The position numbers and the translations under genes were made by a program. From Gracilinanus agilis (taxonomy: Eukaryota), in contig NC_058130.1 in the NCBI RefSeq assembly GCF_016433145.1, forward strand, positions 710,237,874 through 710,301,873: a DNA stretch of 64,000 nucleotides, given 5' to 3'. The notes below the pieces were generated by a model. It had not been told where the DNA came from and made no database searches. It saw only the letters and a list, made by a program, of their open reading frames with translations. Shown here piece by piece: positions 8,101 to 52,999 of the stretch; position 1 is the first letter of the stretch, and each line of letters starts with the position of its first letter.

Positions 8101-10356
8101 TGCCCCAGGGCAGGGGGACAGGACCTGGCTGGGTTGGGCAGGGTGGGGCAGGACAAAGCTGGAGGCCCCGGGGGCGGGGGGGGGCTGTCCGGGGGCGGTG
8201 GCCGAGGCTGGTTGAAACTAGCCGGAGAGGGGCCCGGCTCGGCCCCTCCTTAGGACCTGGCAGGAACCGGGTCTCCAGGCTCTGGGCCCCGCCCCTTCCT
8301 GTGACCTTATTTGGATTTAGAGCTGAGACTGGGAAGGCGGAGTCAGAGAGTCCGAATGGGGGTGGGGGGGAAAGGGGGCAGGACCCTGAAGGACCAGCTG
8401 GGCCGAAGTCCTGAGTCCGAGAGCTGGAGGTGGAATTACGAGGACCAGAGCTTGAATCTGGCGGGACGCAGGCTTAGGACGCTGAGCGGGGGTCTGGGAG
8501 TTGTGGTGGAATTTGACCAGGCAAAGACTGGAGGAAAACGGAGGGAAGCGACTTAGAGGAAAGACCCACGGGGTACTAAGGGGCAGAAATTCCGAGGCAG
8601 GGGGTCTCAGGGCCAGGGTTTAGGGATCTTCTTCGAGGGATTTGGTGGACAAAGGTTCAGAGACAGGACAATTCTATAGGGTCTCAAGGGTCTGTAGAAG
8701 AGATCTGGAGAAACAGGAATAAATAAGGGGTACCTGATAGGGCAGAGGTTTAGTGGCCTGCATAAAGGTCAGGCATCTGGTGGGCAGGATGTCCCAATTA
8801 ACTTTCAGACTGTGCCCCTTCGTCTCCCCTGGAAGCCAGGGGCAGACAATATCCTAGATTCCCCCTTCAGTTACTATAGCAATGACAAGAGCTGGGGGGG
8901 GGGCATTCCCTTCTCTAAGGTATATCACCCCAATCAGGGCTCTATTGGGAACCCCCTTAAAAGGATCCCATGACTATAGGGGGCAGTTAGGGTTCATCTC
9001 ACTTCTCTGGCATCCTTCCCATCCCTGACTTCTGAGACCTGCTGGGTTTGGGCAGGGAGGGGGAAGCTGTCTCACAGGTGAATTAAACTCTAGTCTATTC
9101 AGGCCTCCCCCTCAAGCCAGCCAATGACACAAGAGACTAAAGATGAAGACAAAAACACTATGTAGCCTTTTCTCCCAAGTCCAGACTTCCTGCATCCTTC
9201 CATCCTCACCAGAATCCCAGACATTTTGGAAACACCCAGAAGAGTTGGACTATTGGGGGGTGCTTAGAGAAGGGGCTCATTTACTTTCTGAGGCAGGTCT
9301 GAACCTTTTCCAGTTGTGGAAGGAAGGTGGTCCTATCTATGCCCCCTGCTTTGGGAGGAGCCATTTGTGTACCTGTTCCCCCTGGCTCTCCCCAGATCCC
9401 AGTCCCCTTCAGACCCATTGCCACATTTCCGGCAGTTAGCTCTTTCTTAAGCAAGTTTCCCAGGAAGAAAGGCAGGGATAGGAGCCACCCTGGGGAGTTG
9501 TCCTGGATACCAACCCAGAGCCCAAGGGGGAGGAAGTGAGGTGAAAACAAGCTTTAGGCTTGGAGTCAGGGAATTTGGGCTCTAGGCAGCTCTCTGCTTC
9601 TTACTTACTACCTTTGAGCCCTTGGGCAAATAAGTCCCTGCCTCCTAGATTTCCTACCATAGAATAAATGGGGGGAAGGGGATTGATTAATTTAATGATT
9701 TCTAAGACATCTTCTAGCTCTGATAATCTGTGATTCTTTGGGGATAGGAACCCAGGCATCCCCACCCCTCCGGTCTGGCCTCTTATTAAGGGAGCAAGAG
9801 GAACTAGAGTTGGGGGCTAAGAGGGGTGACCAGATGCTGGAGTTCCCAATTCACAGATAACCCCAGCCACCCCCCCCCACTTGCCTGCTTCTCAGTTCTA
9901 GGTCCTCCGGTACCCCCTCCCAATACACAAGCAGTAGGCATATCTTTGGGTCTTTGGACTGTGAGGCTGGAGTACTAGTATGTGAGGATCAGGCAGGCAC
10001 CAAGTAGGTTACAGACATTGTGTGACAGGGAAGGGGGATGGGTTGGTGGGGGGGGGTAGGAGGTGGGTGGCTCTTTGTAGTAGAGGGGTCGATGAATTTC
10101 AGTGGGAGCTTATTACAGCAGCTTCTCGATTCAGAACTTCATGGCTTCCGACTCCCCAAGTTAGTCTTTGGACCCCCCCTCATAGATCACTGTACACCAG
10201 GGCCCCTCTACCTAGCTCTGTCTCCCAGACCCTGTTTCTCCGCCGCCCGGCTTCCAGCCCCCTACTCCGGCCCCTAGTTCCCCGATCTCCCAGGCCCATC
10301 CCAGTACAGTCCCAGCCCAGCCCTGTCCTTGCCCGGCCCTGTCCCGCCGCCGCCGC

Positions 10357-49001: not shown

Positions 49002-49804
49002 CTATATAGGAATAATAGGCATCCCAGAACAAAGAGGAGCCTACAGTTCTGTCATTCTTTACCAAAAGAGATTTCTAACTATGACAGTGCCTGAGCTTAG
49101 CAACAGTCTATTAGAACTCAAAATGGGGCAAACCCATAAGTATGATGCTCAGACCCAACTCCAGGTCAGAAACTTTCAGGACTCAGACTAGAAAGGCAGG
49201 AATACAACTTTTCCTGGATCACAGAACTTTTGGGACACTGCTGTAGTTGTCTCTGAGATTCTGGAATAATGCAACAGTTGATACCTCAAGAAAACAGTAG
49301 CAGAACTAGTCTACACGTGCCCTTCAGTGTGCAGAGACCAGCCCTAAAGTCCAAAAGCAAGAAGTAAGCCAGAAAAATGAGTAAGCAAAAAAAGAATCCT
49401 ACTATAAAAAGCTGCTATTATGGTGATAGGGAAGCTCAAGGCACAAATCTAGCAGAAGAAAATGATTCCAAAGCATTTCAATGACTCAAAAAAAAAAAAA
49501 AAAGATACCTTAAGTACAAATTTAACAAACTGTTTGAAGAGATAAAGCAAGATGTAGGCCTTAAAGAATTTAAATTACATTTTATTTTATCAATTATCAA
49601 ATATTTCCTTTTTCTCCCTCAACGTCCCTCCTCTATTCCACTGAACAAAAAGGAAAACAAAATACTTATAACAAATATGCATCATCAAGTAAAACAAATT
49701 CCCATATTGGTCATTTCCAAAAATGTATGTTTCATTCTGCATCTTAAGTCCATTAACTCTCTAGCAGGAGGTGAGCAACAGGTTTCACCTTTTATGCTCT
49801 AGAC

Positions 49805-50070
49805 CAGTGATGGCAAACCTATGGCACAGTTGCCAAATCTGGCATGCAGAGCACTGTTGGCACTCAGCCACCCTCCTTCCCCTGTCCACCCCCATCCCCC
49901 CAATGTTATTACTACTAGAAAGGCAGAAAGACGGGCTGAGCTGCTTCTCTCCCCCTCTTCATTGTGCCTGAGGACATTTTTTTCACATCCCTCGCCTCTC
50001 TGCCCAGCAGACCAATGAGAGAGCACAGCAGGTAAGGTGGGCAGCTCACAAGTGGCAGAGATTGAGAGGA
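49805..50070 (+). mobile_element. Second copy of the same hAT MITE family (3' end missing)
   Basis: 5' TIR CAGTGATGGCAAACCTATGGCAC is preceded by the Charlie-type target CTCTAGAC. The internal sequence is homologous to 48786-49001. Confidence 0.75.
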
Positions 50071-50316
50071 GTGGAGCCAAACAATTTTGTTTTATTCTTG
50101 AAAACTCTTACCTTCTGTCTTAGAATTGATATCCGTTAGGGGCAAATGAACTGTAAAGGGCTAAGCAATCGGAGTTAAATGACTTGCCCAGGGTCACACA
50201 GCTAGGAAGTGTCCAAGGTTAGACTTGCCAGGACTCAGCTCTCTCTCCCCTCCTAGCCACCTTGGGTATCCCAAAGCAAACACTTTTGAAGGATTTAAGA
50301 ACCCTGGGCAAGACAA

Positions 50317-50400
50317 TGAGTCACCTGACTCATGAGGGGCGGGGTCACGCGCATGCTCCAATCCTGATTGGATCCGCGCGGCCCGCAGCCACAAGTCGAG
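50317..50400 (+). promoter_or_regulatory. Compact promoter-like module directly upstream of the V-ATPase d retrogene
   Basis: Motifs seen: TGAGTCA (50317-50323) and TGACTCA (50326-50332) forming a palindrome, GC box GGGGCGGGG (50336-50344), GTCACGCGCATGC, CCAAT and ATTGG. The patch is CpG-rich within otherwise CpG-poor DNA. Confidence 0.6.
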
Positions 50401-51456
50401 ATGTTTTCTTTCGCTGAGCTCCACTTCAACGCAGACAACGGCTACTTGGAGGGGCTGGTCCGGGGCTTAAAGACGGGCTTGCTAACCCACTTCGATTACA
50501 CAAACCTGGTGCAGTGCGAGTCGCTGGAGGATCTGAAACTCCACCTCCAGACTACAGCCTACGGGAACTTCCTGGCGAATGAGGTCTCCCCACTCTCTGT
50601 GTCCATCATTGACGACAGAATGAGGGAGAAGATGGTGTCAGAGTTCTTCTACCTGAGGAACCAGGCGTATGAACCGCTGAGCAAGTTCCTGGACTTCATC
50701 ACCTACAGCTACATGATCGACAACGTCATCCTGCTGTTAACGGGCACCCTCCACGAGCGCTCCATCTCCGAGCTCATGCCCAAGTGCCACCCTCTGGGCC
50801 ACTTTGATCAGATAGAGGCCGTGAACATCGCTCAGACACAAGAAGAACTGTACAACGCTATCTTGGTGGACTCTCCGCTCGCTATCTTCTTCCAGACCCA
50901 CTTTTCCAAGGAGGAGCTCCAGCAGCTGAACATCGAAATCCTCCGCAACACGATGTACAAATCCTACCTGGAGTCTTTCTATCAGTTCTGCACCCTGCTG
51001 GGGGGCACCACAGCAGAGGTCATGAATCCCATCTTGGAATTTGAGGCCGACCGCAGGGTCTTCATCATCACCATCAACTCGTTTGGCACCGAACTCTCCA
51101 AGCAGGCCCGGGCCAAACTCTTTCCGAATTGTGGGCTGCTCTACCCGCATGGTCAGGCCCTGCTGGCACAGGCGACTGAGTTCAAGGAGGTCAAAGCTGT
51201 GGCCGACTTCTACCCACAATATAAAGAGCTTTTTGAAGCGGTTGGCTCCAATGCTGGAGGTAAGACCTTGGAGGACCGATTCTTTGAGCACGAGGTGAAC
51301 CTGAACAAGCTGGCCTTTCTCAGACAGTTCCACTTTGGCATCTTCTACGCTTTCGTGAAGCTTAAGGAGCAGGAGTGCCGGAATGTTGTGTGGATTGCTG
51401 AGTGCATCGCCCAGAACCACCGCAACAAGATCAGAAATTACATTGACATCTTCTAG
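50401..51456 (+). CDS. ATP6V0D1-like: Intact intronless V-type proton ATPase subunit d1-like retrogene (351 aa)
   Basis: The protein runs [24 protein letters not shown]...[17 protein letters not shown]...PKCHPLG...ILEFEADRR...[12 protein letters not shown]...[32 protein letters not shown]. It has the same length as d1, no introns, and no stops or frameshifts. The ORF-track TTG at 50368 is not the likely start; the ATG at 50401 aligns with d1 Met1. Confidence 0.93.
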
Positions 51457-52184
51457 CCTCCTCTTCCGATTCCTGGATTCCATGGGGCTCTGTGGGTATG
51501 GGTCCTCACATGTCCATGGTACTGGGCATGCATTCTACTGTTCTGGCCTATTCCATATATACCTAATGTTGAAGTAGAGTTCCCTCTTCCTTCCCCCAAA
51601 TGGACTTGGTCCTCTGTAGCTATCTAGAGTGGTGGGGGACTAAAATCCTAGCATCAGCGCTGAACCCCTACCCCCACCAATAGCCTCTGTAACATCTGTG
51701 TTGTTAAAACTCTTGCTCTAGGAGATAAATACAGGGGTCCCCCTGTCTCAACATTTACAGCTGTTTAAGGCATCTTGGTCACACTTTGATACTCCTTTAG
51801 GGAAAGCCAGTTTGATTGCCCCATATGTTACCTGGCTCTTCTTGCCAGTCTCCTCCTCCTAGCTGCTGCCCCAACACTCTATCCCCAGTGGAAGAAGGAT
51901 ATCTATGTTTTAGGGGCAGGAGAGTAACCCAGATAATCATCCCTCTTCCTGACATATACACATACACATATATAAGTACACACGTACACAACAGACTGCA
52001 CTGCTTCTCCCCAAACCAGCACAAGCCAGGACTCTGGCTCTGGCAACTAAGGAGCTTTGCCTCTCCCTACCATCCTCAGGCAGGAGATTTTGGGATAGAA
52101 GTCAGGGGACTGTGCAGATTCTCCTCCAAATCCTGAGATATCTTTCTTCTTTCAAACACTTTGAGTTTTTTTGTTTCTCTTAAC

Positions 52185-52222
52185 AATAAAGTTGCCTATT
52201 CTGTGAATAAATAAATAAATAA
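52185..52222 (+). terminator. Poly(A) signal and possible decayed poly(A) tail of the d1-like retrocopy
   Basis: AATAAA at 52185-52190 is followed about 16 nt later by (AATA)n, ~730 nt after the stop codon. Confidence 0.5.
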
Positions 52223-52999
52223 ATGGCATAGTTTTTAAAAAAAGGACTTGAGAACTGATCAATATAATGACCAACCATGATTCCAGAAGACTCGTGATGA
52301 AACATGCTCCCCACCTCCTGATAAGAGAAGTGAAACAATGTGGATTGACATATTTTTCTCTACAGGACCAATGTAGGTTTTTGTTTGTTTGACTATCCAT
52401 GTTTGGAACAGAGATTTTGTTCTTTCTTTTTCACTTGGAAGGAGGGAGGAAGTAAGAGAGAAGACAGATTTTTGTTGATTGAAAAAAAATTTATTTTTAA
52501 AATGTAAAAAGAGGATATGTTTGTTAATTAGACAAAATGGATGGCTGAAAGGAGAGAGACTGCCCTGCTCCTACATACCTGTGACAAAACCTTGAAATTT
52601 GCACCAGATGAGTAAGGATCAAGAAACCTAATGAGAAACTCCAGAGATTTTTTCTCAGAGTTGTAGAAGAGGTCAGTTAGAAACCCAAGAGAGAAAGAGG
52701 GCTACCAGTAAAGCCAGTGCAAGTGTTCAGTAGCTTCCTAGTGTGACCAGAAGCAGGCCAGAGAAATGTTTAGTTTGCAGGGTTCTGGGTCTGCAGGCAG
52801 CAGGAGCAGAAGGATTCCTCAAGAAAGCTCATGGGAGTCAGAAGGCCCCTAAGTAGGAACCTTGGAAGCCCTAGAGAGAAAGGCAGCAAGAAACATGGGG
52901 CTGCAGTACTCAGATAGGGACATCCCAGGGCCTCTGAGGTGTCTTAATGTTCTGGCCTGAGATGCCACAGAGGATCCTAAAAATCCATCACTCTGAACT

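What the first reader, a model, noticed from the sequence alone, without database searches (positions are those of the whole stretch)
50401..51456. The d1-derived retrogene carries many d2-like residues
The backbone is d1-type: [51 protein letters not shown], and 351-aa length. Compared with recalled human d1 and d2, many of its changes match the d2 state instead: A5, L27, T29, T51, M74-R75, Y84, S94, L176, L181, S188, E206-V207, L254, Q257, F261, A280-V281, G287, R309. Inference: this could be convergence toward properties of the specialised d2 pump (osteoclast, kidney and epididymis plasma-membrane V-ATPase), or it could simply mark the tolerant positions of the fold.
Basis: inference. Interest (0 to 1): 0.7.

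Follow-up and report, generated by a model that had tools for sequence, protein, structure and literature searches.

The report
Old marsupial proton-pump subunit d retrogene
This is an intact, intron-free copy of the proton-pump gene ATP6V0D1 that marsupials have kept for their whole radiation; its resemblance to the specialised d2 isoform is real but small and scattered, about twice what chance predicts, so it is better read as parallel drift than as a d2 mimic.

Summary

It is an old retrogene. Intronless copies sit at the same locus in Monodelphis, Dromiciops, Antechinus and Trichosurus. dN/dS is 0.10-0.27. The clade lies inside d1 (support 99-100).

Measured against real mammalian d2, the copy is not d2-like overall. 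It is 62-65% identical to d2, while d1 itself is 66-69%. At 57 d1/d2 diagnostic sites it keeps d1 at 37, has d2 at 10 and something else at 10.

The identical states still exceed simulated nulls: 15.9 observed against 5.1 (LG+G4), 9.6 (C20, P=0.008) and 10.6 (C60, P=0.04). Non-mammalian d2 and invertebrate controls show no excess.

The matches are scattered, mostly conservative, and avoid sites conserved elsewhere. Other marsupial orthologues show a weaker version of the same trend.

Best reading: parallel drift at tolerant positions after release from d1's extreme constraint, with adaptive convergence neither required nor excluded.

The parts
50401..51456 (+). Intronless coding sequence (351 codons plus stop) of a V-ATPase V0 subunit d, derived from ATP6V0D1
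   Evidence: The ORF is listed. Pfam PF01992 matches full-length, E=9e-97. It is 77% identical to eutherian d1 and 62-65% to mammalian d2. The AF2 model has pLDDT 86.8 and TM 0.93 to d1 chains of 6wlw, 7uzf and 6xbw. Orthologous single-exon CDS exist in four other marsupials. dN/dS is 0.10-0.27.
50291..50400 (+). Upstream block of about 110 bp conserved in all five marsupials. It holds a GC box (GGGGCGGGGTC), GTCACCTGA and ATTGG. It is either the retrocopied 5'UTR or a proximal promoter. Didelphids carry an extra 17-bp insert with GCGCATGC and CCAAT.
   Evidence: Alignment A1 of the 130 bp upstream of the ATG from the window and L001-L004. Function is inferred, not tested.
51457..52243 (+). 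3'UTR of the retrocopy, ending in AATAAA signals (from 52185) and a short A-run (52237-52243)
   Evidence: Sequence read. blastn homology with the Antechinus and Trichosurus loci runs on from the CDS to window 52335-52382. That the A-run is a remnant of the poly(A) tail is inferred.

Best explanation
What it is. The ORF is a functional, marsupial-wide retrogene of ATP6V0D1, in effect a third subunit-d gene beside d1 and d2. One mRNA-derived copy landed upstream of the retbindin (RTBDN) gene, in what earlier scan notes place as the RNASEH2A-RTBDN interval, before didelphids and Australidelphians split. It has been kept intact since.

How it most likely works. It most likely still makes the boxing-glove-shaped d subunit that sits on the c-ring and receives the D/F rotor shaft. 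This is inferred from the fold and from 77% identity to d1.

How it evolves. Its constraint is far looser than the sequence conservation of d1 implies: omega is about 0.1-0.25, while d1 proteins stay 96-97% identical from shark to camel. All lineages have therefore drifted, and the didelphid stem carries about 0.30 substitutions per site.

The d2-like residues. These are parallel substitutions at positions of the fold that tolerate change. They were reached independently by the two lineages that escaped d1-type constraint: mammalian d2, whose stem is also about 0.30, and this retrogene. They number about 16, roughly 5-6 more than site-heterogeneous models predict. I attribute that surplus mainly to site alphabets narrower than the models assume, and to context-dependent alphabets set by the shared mammalian partner subunits. 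I do not attribute it to recruitment into a d2-type pump. The protein remains d1-type.

Shown: the intact ORF, orthology, purifying selection, placement in d1, the counts and the nulls. Inferred: assembly into V0, the cause of the surplus, and where the gene is expressed.
For: Retrogene and orthology:
- The CDS is single-exon and intact in five marsupials.
- Flanks align colinearly with all four other loci.
- A Folate_rec gene (RTBDN) lies downstream in Monodelphis and Trichosurus, as in the window.

Selection:
- NG86 dN/dS is 0.10 for window versus Monodelphis (dS 0.16) and at most 0.27 across the deepest pairs.
- Least-squares branch omega is 0.09-0.25.

Placement and fold:
- The ML tree of 57 taxa puts the retrogene clade (support 100) inside tetrapod d1 (support 99), apart from a monophyletic d2 (support 100).
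- The model has TM 0.93 to solved d1.

Not d2-like overall:
- Identity to mammalian d2 is 62-65%, against 66-69% for d1 itself.
- At 57 diagnostic sites the states are 37 d1, 10 d2 and 10 other.
- The d2 states are scattered, with a longest run of 2.

Tolerant positions:
- Positional overlap is at expectation.
- No matches lie at background-invariant sites.
- A280, V281 and G287 lie in the loop at residues 280-289; the 281-290 block has mean pLDDT 69.

Generality:
- When an orthologue changes at a diagnostic site, it takes the d2 state in 29-50% of cases in every lineage.
- Trichosurus carries 7 mammal-d2-specific states, and Amia d2 carries 8.
Against: - The surplus of identical states is specific. 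It appears against mammalian d2 only, while matches to non-mammalian d2 and to invertebrates fall below expectation under C20 and C60.
- It is significant for both didelphid copies (P=0.002-0.04) but not for the Australidelphian copies.
- Ten of 54 mammal-d2-specific states are carried, against 4.2-4.7 expected (P=0.008). This is the highest hits-per-difference ratio in the panel.
- L74M, A94S and N308R need two nucleotide steps from the Australidelphian codons, which fits persistent pressure better than one-step drift.
- Expression is unknown, so a d2-like tissue role is not excluded.
Confidence: 0.6

Rival explanations
1. Adaptive convergence. The didelphid copy was recruited into a specialised pump, either d2-like (plasma membrane in kidney, epididymis or bone) or another specialised compartment. 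The shared residues would then be selected to fit the same partners or the same coupling properties as mammalian d2.
For: - Identical states run at 1.5-3 times the null, against mammalian d2 only.
- The excess lies in the didelphid-specific changes: 10.9 against 6.2, P=0.018.
- The copy carries 10 of 54 mammal-d2-specific states (P=0.008).
- Some changes need two nucleotide steps.
- Rate is raised on the long internal branch (omega 0.23, against 0.09-0.12 on most tips).
Against: - Marsupials keep their own d2 (P0183, P0186).
- The copy moved away from d2 overall.
- 37 of 57 diagnostic sites remain d1, and 10 went to a third state.
- Three matches are to eutherian d2 but not to marsupial d2.
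- Omega stays well below 1 on every branch.
- The P-values are post hoc, because the pattern was picked by eye first, and they weaken as the model gets richer (0.008 to 0.04).
- The Trichosurus orthologue shows a similar trend without the same sites.
Confidence: 0.2
2. Germ-line isoform. The retrogene is a male germ-line (acrosomal) subunit, like the testis-specific E isoform of eutherians. The d2-like states would then be a by-product of fast evolution under germ-line-specific constraint.
For: - There is a precedent for a testis-specific V-ATPase subunit needed for acrosome acidification: ATP6V1E2 (PMC11120249).
- Retrogenes are commonly testis-expressed (abstract of PMC4772013).
Against:
- The parent gene is autosomal in humans (my knowledge, not tested for marsupials), so there is no out-of-X rationale.
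- The conserved upstream block carries GC-box and CCAAT motifs typical of housekeeping genes.
Confidence: 0.15
3. Gene conversion. The d2-like residues were copied from the d2 gene by gene conversion. Both genes lie on the same 538-Mb chromosome in Monodelphis.
For:
- There are adjacent pairs of matches: 74-75, 206-207 and 280-281.
Against: - The d2 states never run longer than 2 diagnostic sites, and they are interleaved with d1 states (runs test P=0.98 and 0.36).
- Matches to Monodelphis d2 (15) are no more numerous than matches to eutherian d2 (14-19).
- Residues 84, 176 and 181 match eutherian d2, not marsupial d2.
Confidence: 0.02

Closest known systems
ATP6V0D1 (V-ATPase V0 subunit d1, ubiquitous isoform)
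   Same: It has the same family, length and fold. It is 77% identical to eutherian d1 and retains mammalian d1 motifs such as FCTLLGGTT. It nests in the d1 clade.
   Different: It is intronless and sits at a different locus, upstream of RTBDN. It carries about 81-85 substitutions, where d1 proteins differ by only 3-4% from shark to camel. Its omega is about 0.1-0.25.
ATP6V0D2 (d2, kidney/osteoclast isoform; abstract of PMC2782108)
   Same: Both are fast-evolving paralogues of d1. The retrogene shares about 16 derived residues with mammalian d2, including M74, R75, F261, A280, G287 and R308.
   Different: It is not a member of the d2 clade. It is only 62-65% identical to d2, and 37 of 57 diagnostic sites keep the d1 state. 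Marsupials have a separate d2 gene. d2 is an ancient multi-exon paralogue (exon structure from my knowledge).
ATP6V1E2, testis-specific E-subunit isoform needed for acrosome acidification (PMC11120249)
   Same: It is a lineage-restricted extra copy of a core V-ATPase subunit with a specialised role. It is a plausible functional analogue.
   Different: It is a different subunit and a different clade (eutherians). The expression of the marsupial d copy is unknown.
ATP6AP1 retrogene in the same genome
   Same: It is an intact retrocopy of a V-ATPase-associated gene in the same mouse-opossum genome.
   Different: Its parent is X-linked, so an out-of-X rationale applies. I did not examine it.

Membership tests
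V-ATPase subunit d / AC39 (PF01992) | Full-length match to the family profile | tested here: met
   E=8.9e-97, residues 16-347 on profile positions 1-339 of 339.
V-ATPase subunit d / AC39 (PF01992) | All-helical subunit d fold | tested here: met
   The AF2 model has pLDDT 86.8 and pTM 0.87. Foldseek gives TM 0.92-0.93 to d1 in 6wlw, 7uzf, 6vq6 and 6xbw.
V-ATPase subunit d / AC39 (PF01992) | Assembles on the c-ring and binds the D/F subunits | not testable with these tools
   This needs biochemistry or a complex model. No structure coordinates are available here.
Processed (mRNA-derived) functional retrogene | Uninterrupted coding sequence where the parent gene is multi-exon | tested here: met
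   The ORF is single-exon in five species. That the parent is multi-exon rests on my knowledge of ATP6V0D1 and was not tested here.
Processed (mRNA-derived) functional retrogene | Located away from the parent gene, at one orthologous insertion site | tested here: met
   Flanks are colinear in four other marsupials, and RTBDN lies downstream. The parent locus itself was not seen.
Processed (mRNA-derived) functional retrogene | Poly(A) remnant and target-site duplications | tested here: inconclusive
   AATAAA signals and a 7-A run lie at 52185-52243. An A-run lies upstream of the conserved 5' block in Australidelphians. No clear duplication was found, as expected for an old insertion.
Processed (mRNA-derived) functional retrogene | Purifying selection on the copy | tested here: met
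   dN/dS is 0.10-0.27 in all pairs. Branch values are 0.09-0.25.
Processed (mRNA-derived) functional retrogene | Transcribed | not tested
RefSeq models exist in five species, but their support is not visible here.
ATP6V0D2 (d2 isoform) | Falls within the vertebrate d2 clade | tested here: not met
   The retrogene clade lies inside d1 (support 99-100), and d2 is separately monophyletic (support 100).
ATP6V0D2 (d2 isoform) | Carries the d2 states at sites that separate d1 from mammalian d2 | tested here: not met
   It has the d2 state at 10 of 57 sites, the d1 state at 37 and another state at 10. At 12 pan-d2 sites it has the d2 state at 2.
ATP6V0D2 (d2 isoform) | Expression in kidney, osteoclast or epididymis | not tested

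The most novel reading that the evidence does not exclude
Marsupials have a third, lineage-specific V-ATPase d isoform. In didelphids it has been retuned at some 5-10 positions toward the same solutions that mammalian d2 found. That would be a natural replicate of isoform specialisation, pointing to the residues that set d-subunit partner choice or coupling. It might belong to a set of marsupial V-ATPase retrogenes, together with the ATP6AP1 copy, that build a specialised (for example germ-line) pump.
Probability: 0.2. Interest if true: 0.6.

Novelty: new member of a known kind. Interest (0 to 1): 0.4.

Why it matters
Nobody knows which residues make d2 pumps differ from d1 pumps, and no mammalian d2 chain turned up among solved structures. 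An independent d1 offshoot has been conserved across the didelphid-Australidelphian split. It repeats a handful of mammal-d2-specific changes: M74, R75, L176, L181, F261, A280, G287 and R308. That gives a short, testable list of candidate isoform-determining positions. It also adds a marsupial-specific subunit to the V-ATPase inventory. If the surplus is only drift at tolerant sites, the case is still a useful worked example of how simple models overstate convergence: LG+G4 expects 5.1 matches and C60 expects 10.6.

Tried and rejected
- Ancestral-state reconstruction. I did not attempt it by any other route. I used only extant-sequence statistics with AliSim nulls.
- Large tree. A 123-taxon ModelFinder tree timed out. 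A 57-taxon LG+G4 tree was used instead.
- Marsupial d1. None of the three word searches or the cluster listing returned one. P0036, briefly a candidate, looks bird-like by its residues.
- Gene conversion from d2. Rejected: no tracts, and no preference for marsupial d2.
- GC-biased rewriting as the cause. GC3 is high in all five orthologues (0.62-0.77), and the changes are not uniformly AT-to-GC. Not pursued further.
- Shared loss of constraint at otherwise invariant sites. Rejected: no sites invariant in 42 background taxa changed in both lineages.
- Literature. No paper in the library describes a d1 retrogene. The supplements of two retrogene catalogues are not held.
- Mapping onto cryo-EM interfaces. 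Not possible, because the tools give no coordinates.
- Human DNA. No human contig was fetched or compared. Human chains appear only as rows in the PDB hit lists.

Full report
**1. What is at the coordinates**

window:50401-51456(+) is one open reading frame of 351 codons plus a stop. It matches Pfam PF01992 (V-ATPase subunit d / AC39) over the whole profile, E=8.9e-97. Twenty of the 21 residues it listed are at the stated positions. R309 is R308.

An AlphaFold2 model built on a 45-sequence alignment has mean pLDDT 86.8 and pTM 0.87. It superposes on subunit d1 of human, rat and bovine V-ATPase structures at TM 0.92-0.93. A sequence search of the PDB finds mammalian d1 chains but no mammalian d2. 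The only chain named d2 is from citrus.

**2. What it is**

The word search found the same protein at 97% identity in Monodelphis domestica, annotated 'subunit d 1-like' and in the same 90% cluster. It also found 'd 1-like' proteins in Dromiciops, Antechinus and Trichosurus at 71-74% identity.

All four are encoded by a single uninterrupted stretch. Their flanks align colinearly with the window on both sides of the gene. A Folate_rec gene (retbindin) lies downstream on the opposite strand in Monodelphis and Trichosurus.

So one retrocopy was inserted before didelphids and Australidelphians diverged, and it has stayed intact in every lineage sampled.

Pairwise Nei-Gojobori dN/dS is 0.10 for window versus Monodelphis (dS 0.16). 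It is 0.12-0.27 for all other pairs. A least-squares split of those distances onto branches gives omega of 0.09-0.25 everywhere. The long internal branch between the two marsupial groups has 0.23. The gene is therefore under purifying selection, but a much looser one than d1 protein conservation implies: d1 proteins are 96-97% identical between shark, bird and camel.

In an LG+G4 tree of 57 taxa the five copies form a clade (support 100). The clade attaches inside tetrapod d1 (support 99), apart from a monophyletic vertebrate d2 (support 100). The didelphid stem and the mammalian d2 stem are the two longest branches, each about 0.30 substitutions per site.

By Tajima-type counts the didelphid copy is faster than Dromiciops (49 versus 22 unique changes, p=0.001). 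It is not significantly faster than Antechinus (42 versus 27) or Trichosurus (42 versus 32).

**3. The d2-like residues against real sequences**

I used 10 mammalian d2 sequences (Monodelphis, Macrotis, platypus and seven eutherians). I also used 16 non-mammalian d2, 8 d1 and 18 invertebrate d sequences. The window protein differs from the d1 majority at 85 sites.

- T29 is also the camel d1 state.
- T51, L254 and Q257 are shared by all five orthologues.
- Y84, L176 and L181 match eutherian d2 (Y84 and L176 also platypus d2) but not marsupial d2.
- V207 matches only some d2 sequences.
- A5 is absent from the Monodelphis orthologue.

(All.)

Overall the copy has not approached d2. It is 62-65% identical to mammalian d2, whereas d1 is 66-69%. 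Of 57 sites that separate d1 from mammalian d2, it keeps the d1 state at 37, has the d2 state at 10 and a third state at 10. At 12 sites diagnostic for all vertebrate d2 it has the d2 state at 2.

**4. Is that more than chance?**

I used a statistic on extant sequences instead. It counts sites where gnathostome d1 is fixed, where both the query and a target differ from d1, and where query and target carry the same residue. I compared it with 500 AliSim replicates per model on the ML tree, using posterior-mean site rates and, for the mixture models, posterior-mean site frequencies.

Results for the window protein against mammalian d2:

| Quantity | Observed | LG+G4 | LG+C20+G4 | LG+C60+G4 |
|---|---|---|---|---|
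| Sites changed in both | 42.7 | 41.4 | 44.1 | not tabulated |
| Sites with identical state | 15.9 | 5.1+-1.8 (P<0.002) | 9.6+-2.4 (P=0.008) | 10.6+-2.7 (P=0.04) |
| Fraction identical, given both changed | 0.37 | 0.12 | 0.22 | 0.23 (P=0.004) |
| Mammal-d2-specific states carried (of 54) | 10 | not run | 4.2 (P=0.008) | 4.7 (P=0.008) |

The controls behave differently. Against non-mammalian d2 the count is 5.4, with 7.6-8.3 expected. Against invertebrates it is 3.9, with 6.9-7.5 expected. The Monodelphis copy gives the same result as the window (16.8 against 9.7, P=0.002). The Australidelphian copies do not: 6.1 against 7.2, 8.5 against 8.1, and 11.1 against 9.0. The didelphid-specific changes alone give 10.9 against 6.2 (P=0.018).

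So there is a surplus of roughly 5-6 identical states. It is specific to mammalian d2 as the target and strongest in didelphids.

**5. Why I do not read this as a d2 mimic**

- The surplus shrinks as the site model gets richer (5.1, then 9.6, then 10.6 expected). The pattern was also chosen by eye before it was tested.
- The overlap in which sites changed is exactly as expected.
- None of the matches lies at a site invariant in the 42 background taxa. Only L74M lies at a site at least 95% conserved there.
- Most matches are conservative swaps, such as L/M, K/R, A/S, D/E, Y/F, I/L and S/T.
- A280, V281 and G287 lie in the loop at residues 280-289; the 281-290 block has mean pLDDT 69.
- Every orthologue that changes at a diagnostic site takes the d2 state 29-50% of the time.
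- Trichosurus independently carries 7 mammal-d2-specific states, and Amia d2 carries 8. The hits-per-difference ratios are 0.139 for the window, 0.113 for Trichosurus and 0.110 for Amia, against about 0.02-0.08 for most other taxa in the panel.
- Omega is well below 1 on all branches.
- Marsupials still have their own d2.

The d2 states are scattered among d1 states. The longest run is 2 and the runs tests are not significant. Matches to marsupial d2 are no more frequent than matches to eutherian d2. This rules out gene conversion.

Some points keep adaptive convergence alive. The surplus is specific to the mammalian d2 target. L74M, A94S and N308R need two nucleotide steps. There are no expression data at all.

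**6. Mechanism proposed**

Shown: an intact, conserved, selectively constrained d1-type subunit gene with a d1 fold.

Inferred: it assembles into V0 in the usual position of subunit d. It was released from most of d1's constraint and drifted along the few paths the fold allows. These paths are partly the same ones taken by mammalian d2, because both work against the same mammalian partner subunits.

A block of about 110 bp upstream is conserved in all five species. It holds a GC box, GTCACCTGA and ATTGG. This suggests that a retained 5'UTR or promoter drives the gene. That was the subject of another note (s1-153982), and I only checked its conservation.

A germ-line role is plausible by analogy with the testis-specific E isoform (PMC11120249). 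The ATP6AP1 retrogene in the same genome points the same way. This is untested.

**7. Novelty**

The gene models exist in public annotation as 'd 1-like'. I found no paper in the library describing a d1 retrogene. Two retrogene catalogues have no held supplements. I rate it a new member of a known kind: a functional retrogene that is an extra V-ATPase isoform.

**8. Limits**

- No marsupial d1 sequence was in hand.
- There was no ancestral reconstruction.
- No coordinates were available for interface mapping.
- dS is near saturation for the deepest pairs, so branch omegas are rough.

Noticed in passing
window 50291-50400; L001-L004 about 9890-10000: The roughly 110 bp upstream of the ATG is conserved in all five marsupials. 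It holds GGGGCGGGGTC, GTCACCTGA and ATTGG. Didelphids alone carry a 17-bp insert (ACGCGCATGCTCCAATC) that adds a GCGCATGC palindrome and a second CCAAT. In the three Australidelphians a long A-run sits directly upstream of the block. That may mark the 5' edge of the retrocopy, which would make the motifs part of the copied 5'UTR.
   Followed up: partly
Two V-ATPase-related retrogenes in one genome might belong together.
   Followed up: no
tree; proteins P0183, P0186, P0147, P0156, P0164: Mammalian d2 has a very long stem branch (about 0.30 substitutions per site) and 54 mammal-specific states. Non-mammalian d2 stays about 80% identical to d1, while mammalian d2 is 66-69% identical. The main burst of d2 divergence is therefore mammalian.
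   Followed up: partly
window 50083-50234: A SINE-like repeat lies about 170 bp upstream of the ATG, with many copies in all the marsupial loci. It sits in the one stretch of the 5' flank (49775-50400) that does not align with Australidelphians.
   Followed up: no
L002 and L004, whole loci: Public gene calls in Dromiciops (an abhydrolase-type product) and Trichosurus (a Ribosomal_L36e product) span the whole 21-kb locus around the retrogene. They are probably over-long models, or host genes with the retrogene in an intron.
   Followed up: no
CDS of the five orthologues: GC3 is high in all copies and highest in didelphids: 0.77 in the window and 0.75 in Monodelphis, against 0.62-0.70 in Australidelphians. 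The surrounding window is about 40% GC.
   Followed up: partly
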